Shown: piece after piece, positions 5,801-40,300 of the stretch | Numbering within the stretch: the stretch's first letter is position 1 | Layout of the letters: each line of letters starts with the position of its first letter | Made by a program: the position numbers and the translations under genes | Notes under the pieces: generated by a model | The model's database searches: none | Told to the model about the DNA's origin: nothing | The model's input: only the letters and a program-made list of their open reading frames with translations | NCBI GenBank assembly: GCA_002269645.1 | Contig: NIVC01003006.1 | Coordinates: 61,969 to 125,968, forward strand | Source: Macrostomum lignano | Lineage: Eukaryota | Direction of reading: 5' to 3' | DNA: 64,000 bases

Positions 5801-7236
5801 TCAAAAATTCTAAGGCGGTGATGAGTTATCCTTAGCGAGCACTTTGGTTGCTGTCTCTTCTCAACTGTCTGAGAACGCTCAATCCTGTTAATGCTATCCA
5901 TAAAGAACTTTCAGCATTATATAGTTCAACAAAATTGTCGCCAAAGTTTTCGAATTACTCGTGTTTTGTCTTGACAAAATTCCACATTTATACAATTCCG
6001 TAACACAGAAGTAGTGTTCTGCCGCAGTCGTCTAGGCATCTCACAAGAACAGGCAGAGACTTACTAACTTATGTTGTAACGGGTTTCTGATTGTTTACTT
6101 CAATACTTTATCAATAAACAATAGCGATACGTTTTTTTCTCTCGTCAATCATGAGGTCGCGAACTCACGAAGTGAAATACAAGTAGTTACCGAGAAAACA
6201 AACTGGAACAAAAACAAAATTTTATGTTGCCAACGCGCTTTGTCGTCACCAAATACTTTATACTCGTAAAATATTTACTTTATAAAAAATACGGCTGGTA
6301 TAATAAATTCATAAAGAACAGCATGTACAAAAATCCAAAGTCGAGTCGATTCAGTACGGTAAAGATTCAAACCTATAATAGGGGAAAGATGAAGGTAGAG
6401 AGGGAGAGAGTTATACGCTATATAGGTACAGCTCACAGTACTCTGAGCTCAGGCTCCACCCAATTACCAGCTAGCTGCATATATTCAAGCTGGACATTAT
6501 GATATGGGATGCTTGAATTATCTTAAGCTAATAGCCTTGTTTGCAAACACTGTGTTTTTAATTTGTGTTTTAACACTTAAAACAGCTGAATCGGTTTACT
6601 GACACAACATGATTTACACCCAAGCAGATGATCGATCATTAATTGCAGAGTTTTTTTTAGCATTTAGGCCGCTAGCTCATTAATTGCTCTTGAGTGCAAG
6701 TGTCGCTTGGTTTGCCCTATATAAGAAACACTCTGATCATCAGACCAGCAAAATTGGTAAACAACACCAGCCTTAAGAGCAAGAGGTTGCTCATAACCGT
6801 ACTTGTTTTTAGGTTTTCTTATGCCGTATCCAAATATTATATTTTTGTCGTGAGGCAGCTCAGTCCTAGTTTATAGTCTAGACTTCAGAGCTTAATCAGC
6901 TTTATCAGGGCAATTAGCTAAAATACGATTTTTCAAGTTAGGATACATGTACATCAGAAATTGGATTTATTTCACCGTTACACATCCAATACAGTTGTTT
7001 CATTAAAAAAATTAGTGTTTGGCTGCTCAGCTACAAAGGCTGCAAAGCAAGTCGTGCGAGCTATAAATTGCGAGCTATAAATACAAGCATATACGCTCGT
7101 AGCTGTGTTTTTAGGCTTGAAGTTTCTTGTTAAAGTTTCTCTATGTTGAAATTCAATTTATTTTTGAAGATATTGTCTCCATTTTTATGTCTACATGTAT
7201 ACGATGTGCGTTGCAGATTCACTACAAGTCACCATC

Positions 7237-10200
7237 ATGGATGATTTTTTTCGGCTGCTTGCCTCTATGTCAGCTGATAGTTCAGAGCTATCGGAAAATA
7301 TTGTAAAACAGCACAGTAAAATGCTGGAAAAAATGAAATCAAAAATGGAGCGAATGGAAAACCGTCTGCTAAGGTCCAAAAGTCTTCCAAAAGAGGTTCG
7401 GAAGTTGATTGTAGCAGCGAGAATAGGGAATCATTCTAAGTGTTCAGGAATCTTAGTAAAAGGCACAGACGTCAATAGCAGAGGAGCCAGCAATGAAACG
7501 GCTCTTTGTGCAGCAGCCTCTGGTGGACACTCAAACCTGTTAAATTTGCTTTTGGAGTATGGCGCGGATGTCAATGCTTCAGATGATGATGGGGACACTC
7601 CTTTGATGTATGCCGTCATGGCTGACGAACTAGGTTTCATCAAGTCCTTGGTAACCATCTGTGCGGATAAAGTTGATATCAATGCAAAGAACAAGTCTGG
7701 TAAGACAGGAATTGAGATGGCTTTTAAATCAGGAAAAGAGAAGATAGTGAAATTTCTCTCGCAAAGGAACGCAAAATTTGATTGCAAAGAAAAACAAAAA
7801 AAGACGCTTTTTAAGTACGCGGAAGAAGGCAAAACGTATTTCATTAAGTTTTGGTTTGAACAACATTCTGCGCGTGAAACTGCAATAAACATGACTTGGA
7901 GGTCGCGTACCTTGGCCTTGGTTGCGGCTCTTAATGGCAAACTGAACGTTATAAAAGTCCTGTACGACAATGGTGCCAACTTGGATATCCCCGACGAGGA
8001 CGGCGACACGCCTTTATTTTGTGCCGCACAGAACGGATTCAGTGAAATTATTAGGTTCCTCGTGAGTAAAAATTGTGATGTGAATCACAGAAACAAGACG
8101 GGCAGAACTCCAATTTCGGCAGCCATAGGAAGTAGAAACTTTGAAATCGCTCGCTACTTCTACGATCACGGAGCCAGACTAACAGTTGTTGACATGGAAA
8201 AAATTTCCCTGTTGCTATTGTCAGTAGCCTCTGGTTCAACTGAGTTATTTAAATTTATGTGTGAGCATCTTCCAGAAGAAAGTCTGCAATTCGACGAAGT
8301 TACAACGGACGGCGAGACATGCCTTCTTGCGGCGTCCCAAACCAATAACGTTGAAATATTTAAGGCCATATTGGCGAAAAAAGTGGATTTCAACCATAGA
8401 AACAAACATGGCATGTCAGCAGCCTTGCGAGCAGCACATAATAATCAGCTTGAGATGGTGAAACTGCTGCAGGAGTTTGGAGCCAACCTAGATCTACCAA
8501 ACAATGGCAACCAGACGGCGATTCTTTCTGCCGCCCAACAAGATAACATGCCTCTATTAAAACTTTTGGTAGATACTAATCGGTGCAACATTCACGTTCA
8601 AGACTACAATGGAGAGACACTTGTTTACCATGCAGTGAAAAATCGTGACATAGAAATGCTTTGCTTTCTGATCGAGTCCGGAGCCCCGATAGATGAAGCT
8701 GACGTATGTGGCAACACTCCATTTATTGTTGCAGTTCATGATGACTGCATTGAAGCAGTACAAAGGTTGGTTGAAAAAGGCCGAGTAAATTTGAACAGGA
8801 GAAATGCCAAAGGACACACAGCAGTTCTTCTAGCAGTAAACAATGAGTCAGAAAATATGCTGAAATATCTCCTTGGCCTAGGTTGCGAAAGTGACATAAG
8901 TGACAGATCTGGCGATACGCCCCTTTTGCTTGCGGTGAAGAAAAAGAATTACAAACTGGCAAAGCTTCTTACAACACAAGAGAACAAGGAGTGCGATTCG
9001 AACACTGCCGAAACGAAGACACGAAGTTCCTGCTTGCATGCATCAGCAAAAGCCACGAATCCTGCTTTTATCAATCTTCTAAGCCGAATAGGTGCGAATC
9101 TGGACATGGTGGATAGTGAGAGGAACACACCATTCGCAAAATCTGCTAAGAAGGATTCTGCTTACCTAACTATACTTTCCGCGAAAGGTGCAGATGTCAA
9201 CAGACGAAATTCTAGAGGTCAAAATGCAGCGCATTTGTGTACATTCCAAAAGATGAGCAATCTTGTAGTTCTTGAGGCCTTAGGCTGCTGTATTGATGTC
9301 GAAGATTTTGAAGGCAATGCTCCAATTCACCTGGCTGTAAAAATAGAGAATTATCCAGCGTAGAATTCCTGATCGAACAGGGCGCTGAAATCGATTTTCC
9401 CAACCGAAAGGGCAATACGCCCATACATTTAGCCTGCAAAAAGGGTTCGAGCGTTATATGCGAAAGTCTTCTTGAGCAAAATGCCAAGTTGAAAACAATG
9501 AACAATCGCAAGCAGACCGAATTGATGTTGGCCTGCACGTCCAGAAATGAAAATATAGTTAAAATTCTTCTAATGCGTTACAGTAAGGAGGAAATTAATC
9601 TACAAGATATATTCAGAAGGACTGCATTGCATTATGCTGTGAAGTCGAAAAGCGAAAACGCCGCGAACCGCTTGATCGAAGCTGGTGCAGATGTAAACAT
9701 TCTGGATATTGATGGTCTCGCACCTATTCTACTTGCAGCTAAAACAAGCCAATGGAACGTTCTCAGTAGGGCTGTAGAAAATATCGATTCGAATTTATTG
9801 CTCAAATCAAAGAATGGAGAATCAATAGCACACTTTGCAGCCTCTAACTCAAGCATTGAGACTCTGAAAAAGCTCAAAGAGAAGCTAGTACCACTGACGG
9901 AACTAACTGAAGAAAGTGAGTCCTGTCTAACTCTGGCTGCCACTGGCGGATCAATAGAAGTTTGTGAGTTCCTCATTTCTGAAGGAAATCAAGTCAGTCA
10001 CTGTAACAGAAAAGGCGAGAATGCAATTTGCAAGGCTGCTAAAGCAAAAAATTCTGAGCTGTTTTTCCATCTGGCTACTTGCCACAGAGCGGATTTTCTG
10101 CTCAAGGATGAAAACGGCAACAGTAGCCTCTACTATTTTCTAGACGGCTCCGAGAGCCTTGATCATTCTGCCATATCAGAACTCCTTCTGGACGTTGATG

Positions 10201-13200
10201 AACAGAACCTAATCGATCTCAATTCACAGGGATTCGGACTCTGTCATATGGCAGCCAAGAAAGATAGCGTCAAGCTCCTTCGCGAGCTGCGGGACCGTGG
10301 ATGGGATCTGAGTAAAACTACAGCAAGTGGCGAAACTTGTATCACTCTTGCAGCGAAAACCAGCGGATCAAAGGCACTGAAGTTTCTACTTGAACTCTCT
10401 CGTAACAAGGACGCAATGGAACCAGAGCTTTCCAAAAGTAAACAAGAGCAAGAGAAGGCTTTTCGAATTTGTGCTGAACTAGGAAAGATAGAACTGACTG
10501 ACGAGTTATTCAGTCGTGGTGTTAATGTCAACGCCACCGACGAAGAGGGCAACACTGCTTTGATGATAGCTTGTCAGCACAAGCAGAATGACTTTGCCTT
10601 AAGCCTACTTTCCAGGGAATCGATACCTCGAGTTGATGTGGATGTAAAAAACCAAAACGGATTCTCTGCACTTCATTTTGCCAGCAAGAATCAGCTTACT
10701 GATTGCGTTGAAAAGCTGCTCAGCCTTGGAGCCAAAACTGACTCTGGTAATTCCGAAGGTTACACCTGTCTACATGAGGCCGTGAGGGGCCCTGACTCGA
10801 CTGACGTTGCCGAACTACTAATAGATTCTGGCTGTGATGTTAATCAGAAGACCTCTAGCGACGAGACAAGTTTATTGTTGGCACTTAAAAAAGGAAGTAA
10901 GAAATTGACTAAGTTTCTGATTAGTCGAGGAGCAAGAGTGGATGCAGAAAAAGTTCCAATATCTTTGGTGGTAAAAAAGTTCTTGTCGCAGGGCCGAAGA
11001 GAAATCATAACTTGGCTACTCAAGCTCGAACCAAAGCTGGATGTAAACAAAGTCGATGCTGATGGCCGTCATGTACTTTTTGACGTCATCGACCATGGAG
11101 CGGAAGAAATCCTGAGGCTTTTCATTTCTATTGGAGCCGATATTGACTGCGAAGACAAACGTAGTGTCACACCATTTCTTCACGCTTTAGCAGTTGGCAG
11201 AGAAGATTTAGCAAAGGTATTGCTTGAACGAGGTTGCAACACTGAGAAACGAGCGGCCAATGGATTTGATTGTGTTTTGGCTGCTGTCTCTACGAGGCGT
11301 CTCTTCACTCTAAAATGGTTGTTTAATCATGTATCCGGACTAAACAGTCGTCCACAAGCAGAGATCAGAGGTAAAAATGCGTTGCACTTTTGCTGCCAAA
11401 TTGGACACCCACAGATGTTTAAACTGCTGCTTGAGAATGGCTTCGATCTGAACAAACAGTGCGATATTGGCTGGACTCCCATAGACTACGCGATAGCCGA
11501 AGGGCATCTGGCGATTATAAAGGCAGCAGATGCAATACAGAACAGGACCTTCTTGAGTAGATACGAACATCATGCAAACACGGCAAGTGATGTACCGTCA
11601 CCTTTCGCTAAAGCTGCTGCTAACGGCTATGAAAGCATATTCAAGTTTCTCCATTCAATCGGTGTTAACTTTGAGGGCATAGCCGATACAACCATTCCGT
11701 TTGCGTGTGGAAATGGACAGCAGCACATCATTAAATTTCTTCTTTCCGTTGGAGTTGATATCGAAGCGTATAAGAATCCAAAAAATGGCCAAACGGCTCT
11801 TCTTACAGCCATGTATTCGGGTGATTTGCACTTGATTAGCTTCCTTGTTGACAAAATTAGGTGTGACATTCGAGCTGTCTGTCATAACAGAAACACTGCT
11901 ATTCAAGGAGCAGTCACTACGAACCAAGAAAGAATCCTGAATTATCTCATTAGCAAGGGTGCACTAATTGACGAACCGGATGCCGAAGGAGACACTCCTG
12001 TTCTTGAAGCAGCACTTCTTGGACACCAGCGTATGCTAGACATCTTATTAGACCACAACTGCAACATAAAGAGGCTGAATAATCAGGCTCGAGGTGCTAT
12101 TCATATGGCTGTTATAAAAAATGACAACCCAGAAATGCTCCAGTTCCTAATCGATAAAGAAATCCCGCGAACGGCAGGGATGAAAAAGGCAACACTGCCT
12201 GCATGATCGCCAGCTACCAAGGTCACCAAAAATCAGTAAAGCTCCTGCTTGAGCACGACCGAAGCCTCGGAAAAGAACGAAACGCAGACGGTTCAACGCC
12301 AGCACTGCTGGCCGCAATGAAAGGCAAGCATGAGGTTCTTCAAGTTCTGGCAGAAAATGATTGTTTGGAAGCTAATGACGTAGACAACGATGGCAGCACA
12401 ATCCTGATGATGGCCATTCAGTCCGGCTCTGTGCCAACAGTAAGAATGCTTCTGGAAACGGGTGACTGCAACACAACTGCTGTGAACAACAATGGGATTG
12501 GCGTTCAAACGCTGGCGACGCAGTGTCGCGATGAAGCGATGCTGGAGCTACTGAGGCAGTTCGGTATTGAAGGCCAACTGGCAGAGGCTGAGGCAACTGA
12601 GGCGCAGCAAACGTAAGATTTTTTATTTTTGCCAAACTGTACTATCAATTTCCCGCTGTTATTCTTATTCCGATAGTAATTTTACCTATCTTAATTTTAC
12701 CGGGGCCGTAGCCCAGCGGTAGCGCAGCTGCTCTGGTGTGCCAGCGACCCAGGCTCGATTCCAAGTGCAGTCACATTAATTTGGGGCTAAATTGGAATCT
12801 CGGCTTGGCTCTTCTCGTGCAATTAACGGCCTTGAGAGTCAACCCCCCAAGGCGCAGTGAAGTGTACATGCCTAACGATAAAATAAAGTTAGGGCCACTG
12901 TACACTCCTGTGTGAGTGTGTGCCTGCGCGTATGACTGCGTACGTATCCGCGCGCTTGTATGCCTGCTCAGGGGAGTCGGCGGAATGGGCAGAAATGCCT
13001 CTCACCGGTTGTGTGCCTATGTCGTTTAAAGTGCGTTAGGGTGCACACAACCCCCTGCCTGTAATAAAAAATTTTTTACCTAAGACTTAAGGGTCTTATT
13101 TTGTTAGTAAGTGTCGTTCATTTAAAAAGAATTAACTGTTGTCTCGGATCAAATGCTCGATATTCGTAGTTTGTAATTAAATAAATTCGCTGGATTTATA

Positions 13201-18049: not shown

Positions 18050-21000
18050 TCAGTTGTTATCATCGTCTGAGCTGTCCAGACTGATAACTATTGGCTCTGA
18101 GGGTCTTGGGGCAGCAGGGGCAGGCGGAGGAGGTTGGGGCTGCTGCGGCTGCTGAGCATTCGAAGGCGAGGCCGCCGCGTTCGCTGCAGCCGCCGGCGTT
18201 GCCGCCGCTACCGCCGCCCCATCGCCGTCCGTCAACTCATCGTCGCTCTCCGTCAGATCAAAATGATTGACAGTGGCGGCTGCCGCCCTTCCATTCTGAG
18301 TCTCCGATCCAGCAGCAGCCGTGGCAGATGCCGAAGCAGCTGACGGATCCGACGCAGTCGACTTGGCCGCGGCGCCGCTGTCGGCCGCTGGATGGTCAGC
18401 CGAGTCGCGATCGACGGCTGCCGACCAGCTGCCGTCTGGCAGGAACTGCAGCCGCTCCAGCTCGGAGCTGGTCGGGCTGGACAGAACCTCCTGGCGAGCG
18501 AGTTGGGAAGTCGTGCAGAATTATCTGACTTCAACTCGCTTTCAATCGTTTCTTCTGATACTCTAATGCCATCTGGGGGATGCTTGCTATCTGGGGGATG
18601 CTTGCTATTTGGGGGATGCTTGCTGTCTGGGGGATGCTTACTATCTGGGGGATGCTTGCTATCTGGGGGATGCTTGCTATCTGGGGGATGCTTGCCATCT
18701 GGGGGATGCTTACTATCTGGGGGATGCTTGCTATCTGGGGGATGCTTGCTATCTGGGGGATGCTTGCCATCTGGGGGATGCTTGCCATCTGGGGGATGCT
18801 TGCCATCTGGGGGATGCTTGCTATTTGGGGGATGCTTGCCATCTGGGGGATGCTTGCCATCTGGGGGATGCTTGCTATCTGGGGGATGCTTGCTATTTGG
18901 GGGATGCTTGCCATCTGGGGGATGCTTGCCATCTGGGGGATGCTTGCCATCTGGGGGATGCTTGCCATCTGGGGGATGCTTGCTATCTGGGGGATGCTTG
19001 CTATTTGGGGGATGCTTGCCATCTGGGGGATGCTTGCCATCTGGGGGATGCTTGCCATCTGGGGGATGCTTGCCATCTGGGGGATGCTTGCTATCTGGGG
19101 GATGCTTGCTATTTGGGGATCGATGCTTGAATGCTGTCTGGGGATGCTTGCTGTCTTGGGATGTTTTGTTTTTAGAGGGAATGTCTTGTTTTTTATGAAG
19201 GCTTTATTTCGCTGTCTATTTGTTATTTGTAAAGAACAAAGATTCTATCCAGATGCGCCCCATCGGGGGGCGAAGATTGCTTGTCTGATACTCTAATTGA
19301 GACTAAATTGGATTCATAGATTGAGTCTTCATCAGATGACAAAGACCTCATTCGTCTACGTCTGCCAACTGAATTTTTTATTGTAGATTCCGTACCTTCA
19401 GCCTTCTTGTCAATGACGACTCGGACTTGAATTTATAGGACTACAGAAAGGAGCGATTACCTAGTTACATAGACCAAGAAGCCTCAATGCAGTCAGTGCA
19501 GGTAACAGAGGTAAAATAGGATAGAAGTGACTCTTAGACGACTCTAAAACAACCAGATGTCAAGGCACAAGTCGCCAGAGTCGCATAAGAGTCAATTTGA
19601 CTCTGAGGCGTTCTTTCTGAATATAGCTGTCGCTCTCTAGAATCACTGAGTTGGCTCTTGGAGTCGCTTTAGTCGTTAAAAAGCAACAAGAGTCGCCCCA
19701 AAGTCGCTAGTGAGTTGTTTGAAATGACTCTTTTATCGATTCTTGTCACGGTAACAAGTTCAACGGGGTGCCTTCAACTCTTTTCAGTGCTGTTCGTGTC
19801 TACTGAGAAACTCTTGAACTTTCTATCCAATGTAATAAGTGTTGCAACTATCGCTGATATAATTACCTGAAAATAAGCATCAATATAGAGCTGGCCATAG
19901 GGCGACGGCTGGTCACAGAACGGGCACTTCCACACGGGCTTCTTGGCATTCATAGCCAAGTAGGAGTAGGCATCGAAGCACTGCACATGAGAGCAGGCCT
20001 CCGACCGCATTGGCGTGCTCATGCGCATCTTGCCCAGCGGGCACTTCAACGAAGCCACCAGCTCAGTGACGGCCAGCTCGCAGTCGGACGGGCTCAGCTT
20101 CTCACGGATCATTGTTCGAGTGAAATCGGCCGCGCGAATGCCGCGATCCCGAATCCGATCGATCAGGTCAACCGGGGTCAGGGCGCGGACCAGACAGATC
20201 TTCCGGGGTTTTATTGTTTTGTATATGAAATATGAATGTAATAACTATTACACAATAAAATAATAATAATAATTGATGACACGGCCCAAATTGGACCAGA
20301 TGTGCAACCAACAACTCAGCCGCAGCTATTGGGCGGCGCATCTAAAGGCTGCGTACGGCTGTTCAGTCCAAGGACTGGGGGGGGGGGGGGGTCGCCACAC
20401 ACTCTCATTTACCCCAGCTAATGCTGGCACCCATTTTACAGCTGGGTGAACTGAAGCAATGCAGAGTTAAGTGTCTTGCTGAAGGACACAAATTGTTCCG
20501 AGTGGGATCGGGAATCGAACCCCCGACCTTCAAGTTGTGGGTCCGACGCTCTGACCACTAGGCTACAACCCCCGATAAAAGAAACATCAAGAAGAACATG
20601 GCCGGGTGAGGGGTCACTGCTCTCCTACAGACATTTGATGAGATTATACTATATATCTTAACTGCAATAGGGAAGCCTTCCAAGACAGGTCAATGGGAGG
20701 AGGGTCGTTGGCCCATCCCCACGACAAAACGATAGTTGCCTAGTGGGAACAAAAACGATTTCGCGTCAAAGATCCTGGGTTTGATTCCGCACACGCTCAC
20801 AATAATTAGGAGTTTGTAAATGCTAATTAGTCTATTATTTAGTAGGCAAGGCGGGTGGGCTATTTAGCTGCGTACTAACCACAGCCTACTGTGCTTAACT
20901 TGCAGCGCTAATGTCCAATGTGGAGGGTGGCTAGCGGACAATGACTAGCAAGAGTTTTATCGAAAGATTTGAAATTCGAAATAATGACTCACCTGTACAC

Positions 21001-24788: not shown

Positions 24789-26466
24789 TTGTGAGGCAGA
24801 ATTAGATGCTGAATCCAAAATAAGGCATGTTGCTGAAATGTTTCATTGGGAGGCTAACATATAAAGTTATTTCAAAGCTCAAAATCTGTAATATATAGAA
24901 TTCAAAATTATTAGCTTATGCCTATTAATGTCTATAATTTAGGTAAAATTCTTTTAATTTTATTATTTTAGTTTATTACAATTAATATTCTAGAATTATT
25001 CTAGAAGTGTGTAGTATCCTTATATAATAGTTATATGCCTTAATGATTAAATATAGCTTTTGTAGTTTATTTAGTCTTTAAATAAACATTGAATTTAAGC
25101 TAAGATATATTTGCTGAAGGGTTGCCAGTGATTTTGTCTACATGTACTGCCATTTTTTCTGCTAATATTCATAGAGAGTCATTTCATTTGCCAATTTGGC
25201 CATTGTCTCTGCAATAAAATTTTTCAGGCTTATAATTCAAGATATGGCAGTATTAAGCTGTAGCATTGAGAACTCTAAATAAAGATTTTTAGACTATATT
25301 TAATCCCTTCCAATGATGTATATATGTACTTATTGGGTGTTGCAAAAGTCTTTTCAGTAAATTAAAACCAACATGAAAAGTAGTATTATTCAAATATTTA
25401 AGTATTTTGGCAGCTAAAACTTTTCGCATGTGTTCATGACTTGCAATAGTTAATATTACTTAAAGTAGCTGCCTCCAGCTTTAATGGCTTTCTGAAGGTG
25501 TCCTTGGAAAGCTCTGCAAGTGTCATGGATGTAGGCTGGTAACATAGCATTCTACTCTTCTGTCACAACAGCCTTTAGCGACTCAATGTTGCTGTGGCAA
25601 ACAGCATAGGCCTTGCCCTCAATGTGCACCTACAGACTATAGTCAAACAGCAACATCTGGCAATGATGGTGGCCAGTATGACTTTGGCCCAAAGTTCATG
25701 TTCTGCTCCAGCCACTCCTGTGCAACCCTTGATATGTGTGCAGGTGCTCCATCCTGTTGAAACACATAATTTCCATCAGGAAAGTTGGCATCAACCCACA
25801 GCTTGATTTTGCTAGCAATAACATTTATGTACTCTGCTCCAGTCAGTTGGTATCCAACAGGAAACCACACCAATGGGCAGACACAGCCATTCGATGCAAT
25901 AACACCATGCATCATCACACTTAAGGGGTACTGATTGGTTGTTGAAATGAACCTAACTGACTCCAGAATGTCCTCCTCAAGCTTGATGAGTGTGTCATTG
26001 CAACAGTTTTGAGCAGGATCCATGTTGAAGTTCTTCTTGTCACTGAAGATGATGATGCATCCAGTAGGGGCTGACTTCAAATCGTTCAGGAGTAGGCTTG
26101 CTCTTTCCAGTCCAGATGGTTCTGCCATATTGTGTCACTTAGCAGAGGCCTCTCCTGCACTGTGAGGGACTTGCCACCAAGCTTTTCATGGTTCTTGAGA
26201 TGGTCAACTTGTGGACATTGAATTCTTGTCCTTGGCTTGCCATTGAATGCTTTGGATTCTCAAGAATGGCATTGTGAAGCTCAGAATTGCTCATTGCCAC
26301 TGGCCAGCCACTCTGGGGGTTTGTCTTTTAAAGTGTCTTCAACTTCTTCATTGGCCATTTGCTTCTTGATGTTGTATACTGTTCTTTTAGTGCAGTTTAT
26401 CATTGTAGCAACATCCTTAGGTTTAATACCTGGGCATAGCAAGGTAGCAATCTGGTACCTTTTCAC

Positions 26467-29400
26467 TAGGGGTGTTCGGGTCGGTCATTTTTTCGGGGTT
26501 CGGGGTTTACCCCGAACCCGGTACCCCTACCCTGAACCCCGAACCCCGTCCCGAACATTTCTTCCAACCCCGAACCCCGAACCCGGTACCAAAACCCGAC
26601 CCGACCCCGAACGTAACCCCGAACATTTTCACGCTTATTTTGGTCAATCATTTTAATAAATTAATACACTTTTTCCACCGATAAAAGTACAATATTAATT
26701 TGTATTTCACTTCAATTGTAAGCCTTTTGGGCGCGACGTTAGCTCATGAATGACTTGGGACAAACACAGTTTATATTTGTTGTATAAGTGTAAATTATAT
26801 TGCACAATTCTTATCCTTCAGCTTCAGGAAATTCAAACTGTGATTGTTAGTTACAATGTTAGTTAATTCGGTCCTTTGTCATTTATTTTCAGTAGATGCT
26901 AGATAGTAGACTACATACTGGGCTCATAGACAAAGTAAATGAATAATAATAGTAATATTACATCTATGAGTTTATTTAAGCTGCGAAAATAGAGTACAAT
27001 AAAATTAGATTTTACCCTGTAGTGTAGATATCAGTGGAGATAGAACTAGAGCGATAGAGAGATAGCACAGATAAAACAATGATACAATGAAACAGGAGAG
27101 TTAATCACAAATATATATTTATTTTTACTTTTGACTACAGTTAACAGTAAGTCAGTAGTGGTATAACAGAATTGCTATGTAAAAACTAAAGTGACGTCTT
27201 TACATAAAATTGTATGCTGATTTGAGTAGGTAATCATTGTGATAATTGATTATTGGCGACTGATGCGTGGAGAATAATAGTGTATTTATAAAGGGGATGT
27301 CAACTTAAGCACCAGAATGGAGCCCGAAGTTCAGCTCCGGACCAAACCGACTGCAATCGATAACTTGTCGGCCCAGACGACTAGAATCGCCGAGACATCC
27401 CATCCGGCTCCCTTCCTTGGGGTCCCAGGGGATAAAGGGGATAAAATGGGGATCTCATGTCAACTTAAGGCTCTGGAATGGAGCCCGAAGTTCAGCTCCG
27501 GACCAAACCGACTGCAATCGATAACTTGTCGGCCCAGACGACTAGAATCGCCGAGACATCCCATCCGGCTCCCTTCCTTGGGGTCCCAGGGGATAAAGGG
27601 GATAAAATGGGGATCTCATGTCAACTTAAGGCTCTGGAATGGAGCCCGAAGTTCAGCTCCGGACCAAACCGACTGCAATCGATAACTTGTCGGCCCAGAC
27701 GACTAGAATCGCCGAGACATCCCATCCGGCTCCCTTCCTTGGGCTGACTGAAACTCCTCTTGCTGGCCGCTAGACAGTTGCTCAGTAGGCTTTCGCTGCT
27801 GTGGTAAAGCATTTTCTCTGGCATAAAGTCTGGCAACAAGACGGCGTGGAAGAGCGGAATCAACAAAGCGAAGGCTAGCACCAGACCTTCGATAGCTATC
27901 TTGGTGGTAAGCGTAGCAGCCCAGGAGTCTGAGCACTGCCATTACATGACAATGACGGCCTGCAGTCCTACTTCCAGCTTTTGCTGATGAGTAGTAGCCA
28001 TGAAGAAGTTGCAATCCTGGATCTCTAAGACCAAAGCGATTGTCCGCTGCTGTCGCACACTCTAAGAATCACGCGGTAGGATTTCGAATTATGGCACGAG
28101 AAACGACAGCTAGAAAAATCAAGACGGATGCCACCGACCGAATAGGTTGCTCCAGTTTTCTAGCGGCGTCTCTTGCCGAAACTTCCAATACTCCCGGCGG
28201 CTCGGATGTGTAACTCAAAGTCTCTCCAGGAGTCACCTTCGTAGCTACCGAGAACCTCCTTGACACGAATGTTTTGAATGTAATAATCGGCTTGATCTAG
28301 TTGATACGGACCCACCGAAACCTCTGACAAATTCTCTGTGTGAATTCGGGGGAACCCCGAGCTTTTTGGATCCAGCGGGTTGACAGCTAATCCATGCCCT
28401 TGTGTTAGCAGGGGGGGGCACGCTTCAGATCACAGTTGAAGTGCAGCTGCTCAATTTCGTCCAGTTCGTTGGACAAGAGCACTCGGCGCATGAAATTCTG
28501 CCCGAATTCGAACAACGATAGCCCTGTCCATGACGGTGGCAGCTGTTTAAATGATTCAAAACCTGGATGCGCCCGGTTGTACTTTGCCATCGAGGTCTCG
28601 ATAACAACGTCTAATCGGCTGGGCTCACTGAAGCCGGCTGACGGCAGCCACTGATACGGTTTGTGCCTCTCGTTAACACATTTGTCCTGCTTAATGGCAG
28701 CAAAGCAGCACTCAATGACATAGCGGAACATAGTGGCACAGCGGATGTCTCGGCGATTCTAGTCGTCTGGGCCGACAAGTTATCGATTGCAGTCGGTTTG
28801 GTCCGGAGCTGAACTTCGGGCTCCATTCCAAAGCCTTAAGTTGTCATGAGATCCCCATTTTATCCCCTTTATCCCCTGGGACCCCAAGGAAGGGAGCCGG
28901 ATGGGATGTCTCGGCGATTCTAGTCGTCTGGGCCGACAAGTTATCGATTGCAGTCGGTTTGGTCCGGAGCTGAACTTCGGGCTCCATTCCAGAGCCTTAA
29001 GTTGACATGAGATCCCCATTTTATCCCCTTTATCCCCTGGGACCCCAAGGAAGGGAGCCGGATGGGATGTCTCGGCGATTCTAGTCGTCTGGGCCGACAA
29101 GTTATCGATTGCAGTCGGTTTGGTCCGGAGCTGAACTTCGGGCTCCATTCCAGAGCCTTAAGTTGACATGAGATCCCCATTTTATCCCCTTTATCCCCTG
29201 GGACCCCAAGGAAGGGAGCCGGATGGGATGTCTCGGCGATTCTAGTCGTCTGGGCCGACAAGTTATCGATTGCAGTCGGTTTGGTCCGAAGCTGAACTTC
29301 GGGCTCCATTCTGGTGCTTAAGTTGACATCCCCTTTTAAGCTTCCTCATCCAATCCAGAAGTTCAGACCATGTTACACGTAGCACATGTAAAATTATTAC

Positions 29401-29802
29401 TGAACGTAATTTTTTAAATCATCAACTGCAAGACTGAATGGGTCGAAAAACGACAATCGTTATTTACCAGAAAGTGTAAATGAATCTATGGTTCTATCTG
29501 CTATTTCCGTTTCAAATTGTATGTAAAATATAACTTAAGTTGTACCTGAAACTCAATGCATATCTTTCGCATTGTGGATTTTGCATAAAGAGTAAAAAGT
29601 GCTTGAAAATACTCTTGAGAATGATAATTGTTCAAAACCCCGAAAACCCCGAAAACCCGGTGGCCAAACCCGACCCGAACCCCGAACCCGGTACCCCTAC
29701 CCCGAACCCCGAACCCGACCCGGAACACCTACCCCGAACCCCGAACCCGGTACCAAAACCCGACCCGAAACCCGACCCGACCCCGAACCCCGAACACCCC
29801 TA
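26467..29802. mobile_element. Non-autonomous hAT element inserted in the 5' end of the mariner ORF
   Basis: TIR TAGGGGTGTTCGGG and CCCGAACACCCCTA; subterminal CCCGAAC arrays; perfect 8-bp TSD CTTTTCAC at 26459-26466 and 29803-29810. Confidence 0.9.
27293..29333 (-). mobile_element. TSD-less DNA transposon inserted at AAA|TTT (Spy/PHIS-like), with arms of 161-bp tandem units and a transposase C-terminal remnant
   Basis: Termini GGGGATGTCAACTTAAGCACC and GGTGCTTAAGTTGACATCCCC, flanked by AAA and TTT with no duplication. Minus-strand fragments RYVIECCFAAIKQ, FPRIHTENLSEVSVGPYQLDQA and GYYSSAKAGSRTAGRHCHVMAVL. Confidence 0.75.
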
Positions 29803-29838: not shown

Positions 29839-30552
29839 GGGGGGGGGGGTTTCACAAACTCGAAATTTCACAACATCGAAAGCACCTTCTTTCACAAGGT
29901 CGAAATTTCACAAGGTCGAAATTTCATAACATCGAAAACTCAAATAGCAGCCACTTTCACAAGGTCGAAACTTCACAAGGTCGAAATTTCACAACATCGA
30001 AAGCTTTAGCAAAGGACTTCATAAGGTCGAAATTTCACAAGGTCGAAATTTCACAACATAGAAAAGTTAACAGCAGCCACTTTCACAAGGTCGAAACTTC
30101 ACACGGTCAAAATTTCACAACATCGAAAATTTTAGCAAGAGACTTCATAAGGTCGAAATTTCATAAGGTCGAAATTTCACAATGTAGAAAACTACTGTAT
30201 GGTTCTTGATATATAAAATTTTCGACTTTGTGAAATTTTGAGCTTATGAAGTTTCAACCTTGTGAAAGTGGCTGCACTTGAGTTTTCGATGTTATGAAAT
30301 TTTGACCTTATGAAGTCTCTTGCTAAAATTTTCGATGTTGTGAAATTTCGACCTTATGAAGTTTCGACCTTGTGAAAGTGGCTGCTATTTGAGTTTTCGA
30401 TGTTGTGAAATTTCAACCTTATGAAATTCCGACCTTATGAAGTCTCTTGCTAAAGTTTTCGATGTTGTGAAATTTCGACCTTGTGAAGTTTCGACCTTGT
30501 GAAATAATTTACTTTTCGACGTTGTGAAATTTCGACCTTGTGAAAGCACCCC
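29839..30552. mobile_element. Foldback/Mutator-like MITE with about 16-bp subrepeats (AAGGTCGAAATTTCAC)
   Basis: Left half is inverted relative to right half; GGGG..CCCC termini; 9-bp TSD GTCAGATTG at 29830-29838 and 30553-30561. Confidence 0.82.
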
Positions 30553-31199: not shown

Positions 31200-31470
31200 A
31201 TAGCTTTCACAAAGATAACAGACATTTCTCCTAAAAAAGAAAATATTCCCAAGACAGCAAGCATACCCCCAGATAGAAAGAACCCCCTTCAAAAAGTAAG
31301 CAACCAGATAGCAAGCATCCCTTAATACTTGTAGCAAGAATCCACTTAGATAGCAAGCATCACCCTAGATAGCAAGCATTCTGCAGATAGTAAGCATCCC
31401 CCGAGATAGAAGCATCTACCTAGATAGCAAGCATTCTGCAGATAGCAAGCATCCCCCAGATAGGAAGTAG
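31200..31470. repeat. Diverged inverted relative of the 18-bp PIAS-intron array plus its flank
   Basis: AGATAGCAAGCATCCCC units preceded by AAAATATTCCCAAGACAGCAAGCAT, matching the reverse complement of about 19130-19230. Confidence 0.7.
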
Positions 31471-31724
31471 CTAGTGCAAATGTTACCTCTGCTAATGCAA
31501 TAATCACTTTCTCAAGTTGTGAAACAATCCATGTCTCAGCTAGTGAAATAATTATTTTCTCATCTAGTGCAATATTCCTTTACTTATCAAGTCCAAAAAT
31601 TGATGTTTCAGCTAATACAATAGCCTTTTCTAATCTAGTGCAATACCCCTTGGCTTATCAAGTGCAATATTCCTTCATTTATCTAGTGCAATATTCCTTA
31701 TTATCAAAGTACAATAATCATTAG

Positions 31725-32085
31725 CTTATCAAGTGCAATATTCTTTATTAATTATCAAGTGCAATAATCAATGGCTTATCAAGTGCAGTAATCCTTGGTT
31801 TATCAAGTGCAATAATCCTTGGTTTATCAAGTGCAGTAATCATTGGCTTATCAAGTGTAATAATCCTTGGTTTATCAAGCACAGTAATCCTTGGTTTATC
31901 AAGTGCAGTAATCTTTGGTTTATCAAGCACAATAATTTCTGGTTTATCAAGTGCAAGCAATAATCCTTGGTTTATCAAATACAGTAATCCTTGGCTTATT
32001 AAGTGCAGTTATCTTTGGCTTATCAAGTGCAGTAATTCTTGGCTTATCAAGTGCAGTAATCCTTGGCTTATCAAGTGCAATAATC
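31725..32085. repeat. 24-bp minisatellite (TTATCAAGTGCAGTAATCCTTGGT)
   Basis: Direct tandem units with a degenerate left border. Confidence 0.9.
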
Positions 32086-37514: not shown

Positions 37515-40300
37515 AGTTGGCTCAGGCAAGAAGCCTGTTTGGCCAATATATTTCTATGTATTTAAGATTGCTTCAGGAATAGGAGACAATATTTTAGCAC
37601 TAGTTATTTAATTATGATTAGTACGAGTTTTGCAAAATGGTATTTGAAAGAACGCGGAAAAGTTATTAACGATACTTGGACGACTAACGAAGCGAAAGAA
37701 AAAGCAAGGAGTTAAAAAAGTATTGCAGTTAATAAAAGTAAAAACGAAAGAAAAATGAACAAAAACGAACTTCGAAGGGACTTTACGTTAAGCGAATGAC
37801 GACGATTTAAATAGGTATTAGATAGGAAACTAATTAAATACTAATTAAGTGCTAATTAAGTAGGAAATTAAAAATGGGAAAGGCGGATTTATTTCACTGC
37901 TGATATGTCTGTTTCAGTTTGCATAACTGTTTTAGCTATTCATGACTTCATATATTTTAGCTACACCAGTGAGCTCTTTTCTGACTCTTTTTTCATTTGT
38001 AGCATATCCTAACTTGTGTACTTGCTTGTCATTTAGGAGGTACTGACAGAAGTATTTTTTTCTGAACTTTTCGGTTTGTGGACATTCGGTCAAGTAGTGT
38101 AGGATATCGGAACCATTTCTCGCTCCACACAGTCTACATGGTTCATGAGAGAAAATGTTGGGTGTAATTTCGCATTTCAGTTTTAGGAGGGTTGTTAGGA
38201 ATTTTTTGTTTCTAAAAGTGCATGGAAAGTAATCTGAAAGGTCAGGCCTGCAGATTTTTTTGTAGAGATAGGCGTTTTTATAGAGTTTAATATGTTGCTG
38301 ATTCTCTAGCTTTTGGCTAAGTTCTCTTTCTCTGTGTATCTTGAGGTGCTTTTTCACTAGGTATTTCTCGTTATTAAAGCTTTGGGAAAGTTTATCTTCA
38401 GTTAGTGCTTTTAAGTCTATACTTTCCAGTTTCTTTAGTATATTTGTTTTCCATGGATTTTTTTGGCTGGTGTTTGAGTAGAAAATTTCTAGTGTCGTTT
38501 GGCAAAGTTTTTGATGTCTAATCTTCAGCCAGTAGGTAAGATAGGTTTTAGCAATTCGTTGGGAGATTGGAGTAAGCTCAAGTTCTGATGATATCACACT
38601 GTTGCTAGCAAATTTTGGTAGATTGAGGAGATATTTGTAGAATTTCAGCTGAATGTTATCAATAGCTTTTGTTTCAGAAATGGTAGCCAGAGGGCCCCAG
38701 AGCTCACAGCCGTACGTGATAACGGGGGTGACAAGCGCGTCGAATAGTCTGCGAATGAGTGTGATGTCCAGGGACGTATTTTTTACCTTGTGGAGTAGGG
38801 AAAACATAGCTGAATAACCCTGCTTAGTTTGATGTTCAATACATTTTTTAAAGCTGTTTTTTGGTTCAAAAATAATTCCCAGGTATTTAAATTCATTTAC
38901 TTCCTCTATTTCTTGGTTGTCGTAGATTATTTTTGTAGCAAAACTTTCTGTGTCATTTTTTTGTCTGGTACTGCCCTGCATAAACTTTGTTTTGCTTGCA
39001 TTAACTTTCAAGTAGTTTTGCTTGCAGTAATTTTCCATAGTTGTAAATGTGTCTTGAAGTTCATCTTTGTTTTTAGCTAGAATGGCTTGATCGTCCGCAA
39101 AGAGCAGGATGAGTGGGAAAGCAGATCTCGTAAGAGAGCGCCTAGCGCTAGAGAGTTCAAGATATTCAACAATGTCGTCAATATATAGTTCAAAAAGGAT
39201 GGTAGAGAGAGGGTTACCTTGAAGAACACCTTTAGATATTGGGATTGGCTGGGTTTCATCATCATCATCATCTTTCTTTAGAATGAAACAGGCATTTTTA
39301 TGCATGTTCTTGATAAGTTCTGTCATTTGACCTTTAATACCTTGGTTATCCGTTTTGTGCCAAAGGGTCGGTTGATTTAAGCTATCGAAGGCTTTTTCAT
39401 AGTCAACAAAACCGATAAAGAGTTCATTTTTGTTGTAGATGGACTGGTTTATAATGTTGTAAAGATTAAAACATTGGTCGATTGTGCTGTGATTGGGCTT
39501 GAAACCGTATTGGTATTTTGATATAAGATTGTTAGCGTATGCTAGGTTTTCAAGTCTGGATTTAATAATTTGGCAAAAGAGCTTGCCAAAAATTGGTTGA
39601 ATGCAGATTCCTCTGTAATTGTTGGGGTCGGCACTGCTGCCTTTGTTTTTATAAATCGGATGAAGAGTATTTGTAATCCAACTAGTTGGAAAGGTTCCTT
39701 GTTTGAGTGCTTCGTTGAAAAGTGAGCATAGGAGGTCAGTAAGTTCGTTTTCAAGGTATTTGAGTGTTTCTACATATACTTTATCATGCCCAGGTGCTTT
39801 GTCGGTTTTGAGCTTTTTAATATGTTTTATAACTTCTTCTTTGGTGAATGGGGCATTGAAATCCTCTAAATTAGTCAGAATAGGGTTGTCAAGGTGAAGA
39901 TTGTATGCTAGTCTAATGCTGCTGTCTTGTTCAGTTACAAGATTTTGAAAGTGTATGACAAATTTTTCGTCAATTGCTGCATTGTTATTGGGGCGGTTAT
40001 GTGGTTTCAGTAATTGCCAAAGCTGTCTTGTATCATTTTGAATATAAGCCTGGTTGATCATGTTTTCTGCACACAGTATTGATTCATGTTTCCAAGAAAT
40101 CAAGCTTTTTTCATATGTTTTTTCATAACGAAAATCACGAAAATCACAATTTAAATAAATTTCTTTCTGTGAAACAAAGAGTCAAACAAAATATTGTCTA
40201 ATAGGCCAAGCAAAGTGTCCATCAGTAGCGTTTTGCTCAAGAAGTCTAAATATTTTGCGTGAAATATTTCCTGCTTTATATTTTACAGCTCAGTTTGATT
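37481..40300 (-). mobile_element. 5'-truncated non-LTR retrotransposon (LINE) with an uninterrupted RT-to-C-terminus ORF 40103-37932; clade uncertain (RTEX/L2-like); 5' boundary approximate
   Basis: YRGIC, QYGF, FVDYEKAFDS, GVLQGNPLS, LLFADD, FKYLGI and C-terminal CRLC..HYLTEC motifs; (TAC)n tail at 37481-37513; no endonuclease domain seen. Confidence 0.92.

What the first reader, a model, noticed from the sequence alone, without database searches (positions are those of the whole stretch)
27293..29333. TSD-less AAA|TTT transposon with 161-bp modular TIRs and a Harbinger-like transposase tail ending in a SWIM-like motif
Seen: termini GGGG..CCCC lie between AAA and TTT with no duplication in any register (empty site TATAAA|TTTTAAG). 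The arms are asymmetric arrays of a nearly identical 161-bp unit (about 2.8 left, 3.7 right). The 1-kb core carries broken frames RYVIECCFAAIKQ..YN, FPRIHTENL..VGPYQLDQA..Y, SCHNSKSYRV and GYYSSAKAGSRTAGRHCHVMAVL. Known: insertion at AAATTT without TSD defines Spy transposons, and R-x-x-I-E-x-x-F is the third-catalytic-residue motif of PIF/Harbinger-ISL2EU (DDE_Tnp_4-type) transposases. Inference: the last motif is a Cys-eroded SWIM-like finger. This mix of target rule, giant tandem TIR units and domain order may be an undescribed PHIS-group lineage; near-identical arms suggest recent mobility.
Basis: partly seen in the sequence, partly recalled or inferred. Interest (0 to 1): 0.75.

Follow-up and report, generated by a model that had tools for sequence, protein, structure and literature searches.

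The report
Broken Spy-like transposon copy in flatworm
This is a decayed, non-autonomous copy of a cut-and-paste DNA transposon that sits between AAA and TTT without duplicating its target, as Spy transposons do. Its transposase belongs to a deep, apparently unnamed sister branch of Spy, so it is a new variant of a known kind rather than a new kind of element.

Summary
Window 27293-29333 is a 2,041-bp element with GGGG...CCCC ends, flanked by AAA and TTT. Its arms are tandem arrays of a 161-bp unit (2.8 copies left, 3.7 right), and 454 nt of the arms are 100% complementary.

The 999-bp core encodes, on the minus strand and with frameshifts and stops, only the C-terminal part of a transposase, from the R-x-x-x-E catalytic motif to a Cys/His tail.

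Intact relatives exist only as unnamed metagenome or read-assembly proteins. They carry a C2H2 finger, HTH, a DDE domain spaced D93-D80-E, a C-terminal Cys/His finger and often a ubiquitin-hydrolase (UCH) domain.

This group is homologous along its whole length to a second group (hhalign probability 100%, E 1.4e-43). I identified that second group as Spy at two insect loci with AAA|GGA...|TTT ends.

What differs is the protein clade, the DDE spacing, the terminal sequence, the tandem-unit arms and the flatworm host.

No empty site could be obtained, and Repbase could not be consulted. The "host hAT" is not supported.

The parts
27290..27292 (.). AAA, the left half of the presumed AAA|TTT target (host DNA)
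   Evidence: Sequence. The inverted repeat extends over these 3 nt only because AAA/TTT is self-complementary. The related element L001 is also preceded by TTAAA.
27293..27743 (+). Left arm, 451 nt: a 22-nt tip, two full 161-bp units and a 107-nt partial unit
27293..27309 (+). Terminal motif GGGGATGTCAACTTAAG, the likely transposase recognition and cleavage end
   Evidence: It occurs only at the two tips of the element in the window. The 13-nt core GGATGTCAACTTA is shared with the terminus of the 54%-identical relative L001.
27744..28742 (-). Core, 999 nt: remnant of the C-terminal part of the transposase gene. It is spread over three reading frames with stop codons, and it lacks the N-terminal finger, the HTH, both catalytic Asp residues and the UCH domain.
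28405..28731 (-). 108-aa ORF that starts MFRYVIECCFAAIKQ. It holds the R-x-x-x-E motif; the catalytic Glu codon is at 28711-28713.
28160..28330 (-). Frame that holds FPRIH...VGPYQLDQADYY, the conserved FP-x-L / G-x-Y-Q block that opens the C-terminal domain
27931..27999 (-). GYYSSAKAGSRTAGRHCHVMAVL, a degenerate SWIM-like finger
   Evidence: Alignment A5, sub-threshold Pfam SWIM hits in Spy-type homologues, nucleotide alignment.
28743..29333 (-). Right arm, 591 nt: an 86-nt partial unit, three full units and the 22-nt tip
29334..29336 (.). TTT, the right half of the presumed target

Best explanation
The element is a non-autonomous internal-deletion derivative of a cut-and-paste DNA transposon of the PHIS superfamily (PIF/Harbinger, ISL2EU, Spy). 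The host is a Macrostomum-type flatworm genome.

Its autonomous parents encode one long transposase of roughly 1,000 aa. The domain order is a C2H2 finger, an HTH, a DDE_Tnp_4-like catalytic domain, a C-terminal domain ending in a SWIM-like finger, and a UCH/USP domain. This transposase belongs to a clade that is sister to, but distinct from, the described Spy transposases.

The copy in the window has lost both the 5' part of the gene (up to just before the catalytic Glu) and the 3' part (the UCH domain). The inner ends of both repeat arrays went with them, and frameshifts and stops have accumulated since. It can therefore move only if a transposase is supplied in trans.

Inferred mechanism. 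The transposase binds the shared tip G[G/A]GGATGTCAACTTA and the GGGGAT-containing blocks repeated every 161 bp in both arms. It excises the element and joins both ends at the same phosphodiester position between AAA and TTT. Because the joining is not staggered, no target-site duplication forms, as shown experimentally for Spy.

Shown here: the anatomy, the homologies, the flanks, and the existence of other copies with the same deletion junction.

Inferred, not shown: which sites the transposase binds, the blunt insertion chemistry, and the true empty site.
For: Structure and flanks
- Arms, termini and flanks.

Coding remnant and its relatives
- The core translation hits P0001 (560 aa, E 4.8e-57, 54% identity), P0003 (81%) and the Macrostomum lignano gene model P0002 (87%).
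- P0001 has C2H2, HTH_Tnp_4 and DDE_Tnp_4 hits, all sub-threshold. Its relative P0007 passes the DDE_Tnp_4 threshold at 32.4 bits against 24.8.
- The contig of P0001 (L001) starts its element with TTAAA|GAGGATGTCAACTTAGG. That is the same tip as in the window, and it is also preceded by AAA.
- L126 and L134 show that the protein continues past the finger into a UCH domain, which the window lacks.

Link to Spy
- A phmmer search over 1.84 billion representative proteins gave 105 hits.
- BLAST clustering separates group A, which includes the window lineage, from group B down to E 1e-25.
- hhalign of A against B gives probability 100%, E 1.4e-43, over 463 columns from the HTH to the finger.
- Group B is Spy. 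Aricia agestis locus L125 has AAA|GGAGAATGCCCA...TGGGCTTTCTCC|TTT. Planococcus citri locus L135 has AAA|GGAGGAGTATCG...CGATACTCCTCC|TTT with perfect TIRs longer than 1.1 kb.
- Spy inserts at AAA|TTT without a target duplication. This was shown by empty sites (PMC4122938) and by 8,810 integrations of cgSpy in human cells (PMC11304231).

Amplification as a non-autonomous family
- P0002 and P0014 contain the same junction between repeat unit and core but different flanking sequence. At least three copies of this deletion derivative therefore exist.
Against: - No empty site, paralogous or orthologous, could be obtained. Formally, AAA and TTT could be the last bases of the inverted repeat.
- The target rule rests on one complete insertion plus one left end.
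- The tip GGGGATGT does not fit the published Spy consensus GGANNNNG.
- The window copy retains neither catalytic Asp, so its assignment rests on homologues.
- The core translation alone has no Pfam hit.
- All close relatives come from metagenomes or read assemblies without taxonomy. The host assignment rests on two Macrostomum gene models.
- Transposase binding to the repeated GGGGAT blocks is inference only.
Confidence: 0.8

Rival explanations
1. It is an ordinary member of an already described group: Spy itself, or a family that Repbase files under ISL2EU. On this reading the 'separate lineage' only reflects the lack of annotated relatives in the databases available here.
For: - The target rule is the same, and the overall architecture (HTH, DDE, SWIM-like tail) matches verified Spy-type proteins.
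- Repbase is known to file some Spy families under ISL2EU (PMC4122938).
- Spy TIRs range from 9 to 1,474 bp (PMC4122938).
- I could not query Repbase or Dfam.
Against: - Group A and group B stay separate down to BLASTP E 1e-25.
- DDE spacing is D93-96 / D74-102 / E, against the published D79-80 / D44-62 / E (PMC4122938).
- DDE_Tnp_4 scores are 14-32 bits for group A against 53-71 bits for group B.
- The N-terminal finger is C2H2 rather than Cx2C...Cx2H.
- None of the 20 group A clusters I looked up carries a taxon name or an informative protein name.
- Surveys report Spy only in arthropods, molluscs, cnidarians and a rotifer (PMC4122938, PMC11304231).
Confidence: 0.3
2. It is a PIF/Harbinger-type insertion with a 3-bp TAA target-site duplication. 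The element would then be AGGGG...CCCCTTT, flanked by TAA on both sides.
For: - TAA is found on both sides at boundary shift -1/+3.
- In L001 the left end can also be read as TAA + A + GAGG.
- The protein is DDE_Tnp_4-like.
Against: - This register makes the two tips unequal (A on the left, AAA on the right), although the inverted repeat is perfect.
- The flanks are AT-rich, and several other asymmetric short matches occur by chance.
- The nearest characterised relatives are Spy, not Harbinger.
- No second ORF of the Myb/SANT type was seen on related contigs.
Confidence: 0.06
3. It is not a mobile unit at all. It would be a local inverted duplication or foldback satellite that happens to enclose a dead gene fragment.
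For: The arms are long, perfect and built from tandem units, as in foldback DNA.
Against: - The enclosed fragment is a transposase remnant.
- The same tip sequence ends a distant relative that carries the full gene.
- The same junction between unit and core occurs in gene models with different flanks.
- The boundaries are sharp and sit exactly at AAA|TTT.
Confidence: 0.03

Closest known systems
Spy transposons (PHIS superfamily; Han et al. 2014, PMC4122938; active cgSpy, PMC11304231)
   Same: - Sits between AAA and TTT with no target-site duplication.
- TIRs can be long.
- Relatives encode a single long transposase ORF.
- The protein has an HTH, a DDE_Tnp_4-type core with R-x-x-x-E, an FP-x-L/G-x-Y-Q block and a C-terminal SWIM-like finger.
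- Whole-length profile homology to verified Spy-type proteins.
   Different: - The proteins form a separate sequence cluster.
- About 13 extra residues lie between D1 and D2, and about 30-40 between D2 and E.
- The N-terminal finger is C2H2.
- Full-length relatives carry a UCH/USP domain.
- The tip is GGGGATGT, not GGANNNNG.
- The arms are tandem 161-bp units, whereas long Spy TIRs were reported to have no sub-repeat structure (PMC4122938).
- The host is a flatworm.
- The first Cys pair of the finger is lost.
ISL2EU transposons
   Same: PHIS superfamily, reported as sister to Spy. TIRs start with GG. The transposase carries an N-terminal zinc finger.
   Different: ISL2EU makes a 2-bp AT/TA duplication, has a THAP finger and has a second ORF with a YqaJ domain (PMC4122938, PMC4482050). 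None of these is seen here.
PIF/Harbinger transposons
   Same: A DDE_Tnp_4/HTH_Tnp_4-type transposase and an AT-rich target.
   Different: Harbinger makes a 3-bp TWA duplication and has a second Myb/SANT ORF. Here there is no symmetric duplication, no second ORF was seen on relatives, and Pfam scores are much weaker.
Foldback-like elements with modular long TIRs (Drosophila FB; Galileo of the P superfamily). This comparison is from my own knowledge and was not tested here.
   Same: Long inverted arms built from tandem sub-repeats, with unequal copy numbers in the two arms and little or no coding capacity in most copies.
   Different: There is no sequence or transposase relationship. Those elements make target-site duplications.

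Membership tests
Spy (PHIS group) | Insertion exactly between AAA and TTT with no target-site duplication | tested here: met
   The flanks are TATAAA|...|TTTTAAG, and no symmetric-register duplication exists outward of the GGGG ends. The left end of L001 is also preceded by AAA. Caveat: no empty site was available, so AAA/TTT as target rather than as element tip is inferred.
Spy (PHIS group) | Terminal consensus 5'-GGANNNNG-3' | tested here: not met
   The window tip is GGGGATGT and the L001 tip is GAGGATGT. For comparison, the verified Spy locus L125 has GGAGAATG, which fits, and L135 has GGAGGAGT, which fits GGA only.
Spy (PHIS group) | Transposase with D(79-80)D(44-62)E spacing | tested here: not met
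   Nine group A proteins have D93-96 / D74-102 / E; P0001 has 93 and 80. The window copy itself lacks both Asp residues.
Spy (PHIS group) | Transposase falls within the Spy clade | tested here: not met
   BLASTP single-linkage clustering keeps the window lineage (group A) apart from the Spy-type group B at E 1e-40 and 1e-25. They join only at 1e-15. Homology itself is certain (hhalign 100%). No true phylogeny with Repbase references was possible.
Spy (PHIS group) | Single transposase ORF with an N-terminal HTH and no accessory ORF | tested here: inconclusive
   L001 carries one long ORF with a sub-threshold HTH_Tnp_4 hit (E 2e-4). Some distant group A contigs have an upstream C2H2 ORF, which may be part of the same protein.
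PHIS superfamily (DDE_Tnp_4-type transposases) | DDE_Tnp_4-type catalytic domain | tested here: met
   P0007 scores 32.4 bits against a threshold of 24.8. Group A is homologous to group B, which scores 53-71 bits over the full model. The window fragment alone gives no Pfam hit.
PHIS superfamily (DDE_Tnp_4-type transposases) | R-x-x-x-E block holding the third catalytic residue | tested here: met
   RYVIE lies at window 28711-28725 on the minus strand, aligned with RFAVE, RYVVE and RWVVE of relatives.
PHIS superfamily (DDE_Tnp_4-type transposases) | Published spacing D(11-19)P(18-28)R(3)E between the second Asp and the Glu | tested here: not met
   Group A has 74-102 residues between D2 and E, an insertion relative to all four groups aligned in PMC4122938.
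PIF/Harbinger | 3-bp TWA target-site duplication | tested here: not met
   Only an asymmetric TAA match exists (shift -1/+3), and it breaks the symmetry of the tips.
ISL2EU | 2-bp AT/TA duplication, THAP finger and a YqaJ ORF | tested here: not met
   There is no flanking 2-bp duplication outside the arms. The fingers in relatives are C2H2. No YqaJ hit was found on related contigs.
SWIM zinc finger (Pfam PF04434) | C-x-C-x(n)-C-x-H ligand signature | tested here: not met
   The window reads Y-S-S-A...G-R-H-C-H. The first two Cys positions are Ser and Ala, as in L126 and L001, and the third is Arg. Spy-type homologues do have C-x-C-x9-C-x-H, and other group A proteins have C-x4-C-x8-C-C-x-H.
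SWIM zinc finger (Pfam PF04434) | Score above Pfam's gathering threshold (19.6 bits) | tested here: not met
   The best scores are 14.9, 14.3, 11.7 and 10.0 bits, in 4 of 8 Spy-type proteins, always at the C-terminal motif. None was found in group A. A Foldseek search of an AlphaFold2 model (pLDDT 74) against the PDB found nothing below E 0.3.

The most novel reading that the evidence does not exclude
The window lineage may represent an undescribed PHIS clade, sister to Spy, with these properties:
- it keeps TSD-less AAA|TTT insertion;
- its transposase has an enlarged catalytic core, a C2H2 finger and a fused ubiquitin-hydrolase (UCH/USP) domain;
- it occurs in flatworms and is abundant in marine eukaryote metagenomes;
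- in the flatworm branch, the SWIM-like/UCH tail may be expressed through a conserved +1 frame change at a stop codon.
Probability: 0.4. Interest if true: 0.6.

Novelty: new variant of a known kind. Interest (0 to 1): 0.45.

Why it matters
Spy is the only eukaryotic cut-and-paste group known to insert without a target-site duplication, and an active member is being developed as a scar-free gene-transfer tool.

- A deep sister clade with the same target behaviour but a differently built transposase would show that blunt AAA|TTT integration is older and more widespread than the arthropod, mollusc and cnidarian distribution suggests.
- It would give a second, divergent set of proteins for working out which residues set the zero-stagger chemistry.
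- It would document recurrent fusion of deubiquitinase or deSUMOylase domains to PHIS transposases.
- For genome annotation, this family will be missed by TSD-based and Pfam-based transposon finders.

The copy in the window is itself a dead, ordinary non-autonomous element.

Tried and rejected
- Pfam on the core translation, frame by frame and stitched: nothing.
- A scan of JGI metagenome contigs with the 15-nt tip GRGGATGTCAACTTA gave 120+ loci, none related to the element by BLASTN.
- A profile search with the untrimmed group A alignment was swamped by low-complexity acidic stretches and returned only P0001 and P0003.
- A tail/UCH profile search returned only P0020 and P0196.
- Exact-product look-ups of the 122-aa ORF in the arms and of the 161-aa ORF in the left flank found nothing on record. 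No paralogous empty site or further copy with DNA could be fetched.
- There is no second copy of the element, its flanks or an empty site inside the window.
- TIR and flank scans of distant group A contigs (L003, L004, L128-L133) gave no convincing termini. The six Tara/ENA contigs are 99.5% identical almost end to end, so they carry little flank information.
- An AlphaFold2 model of the Spy-type C-terminal domain (pLDDT 74) had no PDB neighbour below Foldseek E 0.3. The SWIM fold is neither confirmed nor excluded.
- The supplements of the two Spy papers hold no protein sequences. I therefore had to identify Spy proteins indirectly, through genomic termini.
- Literature searches for ISL2EU or Spy with SWIM, for transposase with UCH, and for Macrostomum TIR transposons found no prior description.
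- Rejected: 'host hAT' (no supporting hit), and TSD readings of TA, TAA or TTAA.
Full report
**1. What is there**

Window 27293-29333 is a sharply bounded 2,041-bp element.
- Its arms, 27290-27743 and 28883-29336, are 454 nt long and 100% complementary.
- The arms are tandem arrays of a 161-bp unit: 2.8 copies on the left and 3.7 on the right, with 98% matches.
- The 17-nt tip GGGGATGTCAACTTAAG occurs only at the two ends of the element in the 64-kb window. Chance expectation is 0.22 matches.
- The flanks read TATAAA|GGGG...CCCC|TTTTAAG.
- I scanned all boundary shifts of +-6 nt for duplications of 2-10 nt. No duplication appears in any register that keeps the two tips symmetric outward of the GGGG ends. 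The only symmetric hit is a self-complementary AT inside the arms. Short asymmetric matches such as TAA and TTA occur in the AT-rich flanks.
- Each unit carries a terminus-like block, GGGGATAAAGGGGATAAAATGGGGATCTCATGTCAACTTAAGG. As a result GGGGAT occurs 7 times in the left arm, 10 times in the right arm, always pointing inward, and never in the core.
- The innermost units are truncated at different points, after 107 nt on the left and 86 nt on the right. This fits internal deletions that removed the inner ends of the arrays together with coding sequence.

**2. The core is a transposase remnant**

On the minus strand the 999-bp core reads through several frame changes and stop codons:
- ...CATMFRYVIECCFAAIKQDKCVNERHKPYQW...
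- then ...PLDPKSSGFPRIHTENLSEVSVGPYQLDQADYYIQNIRVKEV...
- then ...WKFRQETPLENWSNLFGRWHPS...
- then ...SCHNSKSYRVILRV...
- and finally ...NRFGLRDPGLQLLHGYYSSAKAGSRTAGRHCHVMAVLRLLGCY...

Pfam sees nothing in these pieces. The stitched translation does find relatives:
- P0001: 560 aa, JGI metagenome, E 4.8e-57, 54% identity.
- P0003: from a Logan read assembly, 81% identity.
- P0002: a UniRef gene model from Macrostomum lignano, 87% identity.

P0001 supplies the missing N-terminal half. It has a C2H2 finger and an HTH_Tnp_4-like region. The first Asp is in LIGDHTYFY, the second in AIFDRGY, and the Glu in RFAVECTF.

The window copy begins just upstream of it and holds neither Asp.

**3. Related elements**

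- The contig of P0001 (L001) begins its element with ...GCGCTTAAA|GAGGATGTCAACTTAGG. The tip core GGATGTCAACTTA is the same as in the window, and it is again preceded by AAA.
- In L001 the ORF ends at a TGA where both the window and a sister contig (L134) have TGG.
- L126 (Logan) and L134/P0196 (JGI) show that the protein continues through the Cys/His tail and a Gln-rich linker into a UCH/USP domain, PF00443. The window copy stops in the linker, so it has lost the 3' part of the gene as well.
- Two Macrostomum-type gene models, P0002 and P0014, contain the translated 161-bp unit joined to the core at the same junction as in the window. Their flanking sequence is absent from the window.
- At least three copies of this deletion derivative therefore exist, so it spread as a non-autonomous family. 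Where BLAST aligns them, the window core matches those two gene models at about 85-91% amino-acid identity.

**4. Where the protein belongs**

A phmmer search of P0001 against 1.84 billion representative proteins gave 105 hits. BLASTP clustering splits the longer hits into two super-groups, which stay apart at E 1e-40 and 1e-25 and merge only at 1e-15.

Group A contains the window lineage.
- None of the 20 clusters I looked up carries a taxon name or an informative protein name. All come from ENA, Tara, Logan, JGI or MetaClust.
- Members are roughly 750-1,500 aa long.
- They have an N-terminal C2H2 finger.
- DDE spacing is D93-96 / D74-102 / E.
- The C-terminal motif is G-Y-x-C-x4-C-x2-G-x-R-x2-G-C-C-x-H.
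- Several members have a C-terminal UCH domain.
- Pfam DDE_Tnp_4 scores are weak, and only P0007 passes the threshold.

Group B has a different profile.
- DDE_Tnp_4 scores are strong over the full model (E 1e-14 to 1e-19), and HTH_Tnp_4 is present.
- The N-terminal finger has the pattern Cx2C...Cx2H.
- The C-terminus reads Y-C-x-C-K-x-G-x-R-T-V-G-C-C-S-H, which is the exact SWIM signature C-x-C-x9-C-x-H. It draws sub-threshold Pfam SWIM hits in 4 of 8 proteins.

I identified group B as Spy from genomic termini at two loci.
- Aricia agestis protein XP_041987907.1 lies in an element AAA|GGAGAATGCCCA...TGGGCTTTCTCC|TTT with shared subterminal motifs.
- Planococcus citri protein XP_065213296.1 lies in an element AAA|GGAGGAGTATCG...CGATACTCCTCC|TTT with perfect TIRs longer than 1.1 kb.

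These features match the published definition of Spy: an AAA|TTT target, no TSD, a GGANNNNG tip and TIRs of 9-1,474 bp (PMC4122938).

Profile-profile comparison of groups A and B gives probability 100% and E 1.4e-43 over 463 columns, from the HTH to the finger. Group A carries insertions between D2 and E and within the C-terminal domain.

**5. The SWIM-like tail**

Alignment A5 places the window's FPRIH...GPYQLDQADYY, SCHNSKSYRVILRV and GYYSSAKAGSRTAGRHCHVMAVL on three conserved blocks:
- FP-x-L...G-x-Y-Q-x-K-Q-A-x-S-Y
- S-R-H-x-S-x-K-x-Y-x-V-x-I
- Y-C-x-C-K-x-G-x-R-T-x-G-C-C-S-H-V...L-x-Y-L-G

Two corrections apply.
- This module is standard in Spy-type transposases, although the Spy literature I could read does not describe it.
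- The first Cys pair is Ser and Ala in the window, in L126 and in L001, which represent at least two subfamilies (53% tail identity between L126 and L001). The tail between L126 and L001 has dN/dS of 0.42/1.59. The loss is therefore a property of the lineage, not decay of this copy. Only the C to R change (GCDCH to GRHCH) is specific to this copy.

An AlphaFold2 model of the Spy-type C-terminal domain has pLDDT 74 and consists of two helices, a five-stranded sheet and a helix. It has no PDB neighbour below E 0.3, so the fold test is uninformative.

**6. Mechanism**

Established for Spy: excision and non-staggered integration between AAA and TTT. This is shown by empty sites in silkworm strains (PMC4122938). 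For cgSpy it is shown by 8,810 mapped integrations in human cells, about 60% at AAWTT and without TSDs (PMC11304231).

Inferred here: a group A transposase supplied in trans recognises the shared tip and the repeated terminus-like blocks in the arms, and moves this defective copy in the same way.

The unequal unit numbers and the truncated inner units point to unequal exchange or slippage within the arrays, and to deletion of the interior as in abortive gap repair. The perfect identity of the two arms may reflect recent copying or homogenisation within the element. It does not date the insertion.

**7. Classification**

The element works like Spy but fails several of Spy's published defining features: the tip consensus, the DDE spacing and clade membership by clustering. 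I therefore file it in the PHIS superfamily as a Spy-like sister lineage, not as Spy proper.

It does not fit PIF/Harbinger, because there is no symmetric TWA duplication and no Myb/SANT ORF on relatives. It does not fit ISL2EU, because there is no 2-bp duplication, no THAP finger and no YqaJ ORF.

Whether the lineage is truly undescribed could not be checked against Repbase or Dfam.

**8. Limits**

- No empty site was obtained.
- Only one complete insertion and one additional left end are available for the target rule.
- No real phylogeny with reference sets was possible.
- Host identity is inferred from two gene models.

**9. Verdict**

This is a dead non-autonomous copy of a Spy-like transposon from a divergent, probably unnamed PHIS clade. 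It is of moderate interest to transposon specialists, mostly because of the clade (TSD-less insertion, UCH fusion, tandem-unit TIRs, flatworm host) rather than because of this copy.

Noticed in passing
L126:760-775 and L001:2745-2760; window 27985-27995 (minus strand): In both relatives that cover this site, the main transposase frame ends in a stop followed by C (TAC TGA C in L126, GCA TAA C in L001). This falls exactly where the SWIM-like finger begins, and the finger and tail continue in the +1 frame. L126 and L001 have no indel relative to each other here, whereas the window has one base fewer and is fused in frame. The +1 tail shows dN/dS of about 0.26 between the two relatives. This could be a conserved programmed +1 frameshift, or two decayed copies that coincide.
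   Followed up: partly
Relatives P0009, P0030, P0032, P0196 (L134:104-1192), L126:1090-1344; P0091: Protease domains are fused to the C-terminus of PHIS transposases. Group A proteins, including the flatworm lineage, carry a UCH/USP domain (PF00443). One Spy-type protein carries a Ulp1/Peptidase_C48 domain. I found no description of this in the searchable literature.
   Followed up: partly
L128-L133 (Tara Oceans / ENA contigs): A 1,119-aa group A transposase-UCH gene, with an upstream 454-aa ORF that has a weak, sub-threshold C2H2 hit, recurs at 99.5% identity on 6-7 kb contigs from many marine samples. This suggests a young, abundant element in an unidentified marine eukaryote.
   Followed up: partly
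window 25640-26480 (minus strand): A decayed transposase-like reading frame lies 0.8 kb to the left of the element. It has an HTH_23 hit (E 9e-6) and a stretch ...FQQDGAPAHISR... that looks Tc1/mariner-like by eye.
   Followed up: partly
window 26508-26625 and 29634-29795: Two blocks of degenerate CCCGAAC/CCCCGAAC heptamer repeats, about 84% alike and in direct orientation, bracket the insertion region 3.1 kb apart. They may belong to the repeat into which the element inserted.
   Followed up: no
window 29850-30545: A large imperfect palindrome is built from a 16-bp repeat (TTTCACAAGGTCGAAA) organised in 62-bp and 126-bp higher-order units. The two arms are 80-92% complementary. It is foldback-like DNA unrelated to the element.
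   Followed up: no
window 18576-19145: A very regular 18-bp minisatellite of more than 30 copies, each containing GGGGAT, overlaps the ORFs at 18392-19296.
   Followed up: no
window 7195-12206; 37932-40103; 55592-57541: Context genes: two long ankyrin-repeat ORFs; a reverse-transcriptase ORF (RVT_1, E 2.8e-31) on the minus strand; and a pyruvate-carboxylase-like C-terminal ORF (PYC_OADA, biotin-lipoyl). This fits a repeat-rich animal genome.
   Followed up: no
window 31332-31999: Further tandem arrays with 18/55-bp and 24-bp periods lie to the right of the element.
   Followed up: no
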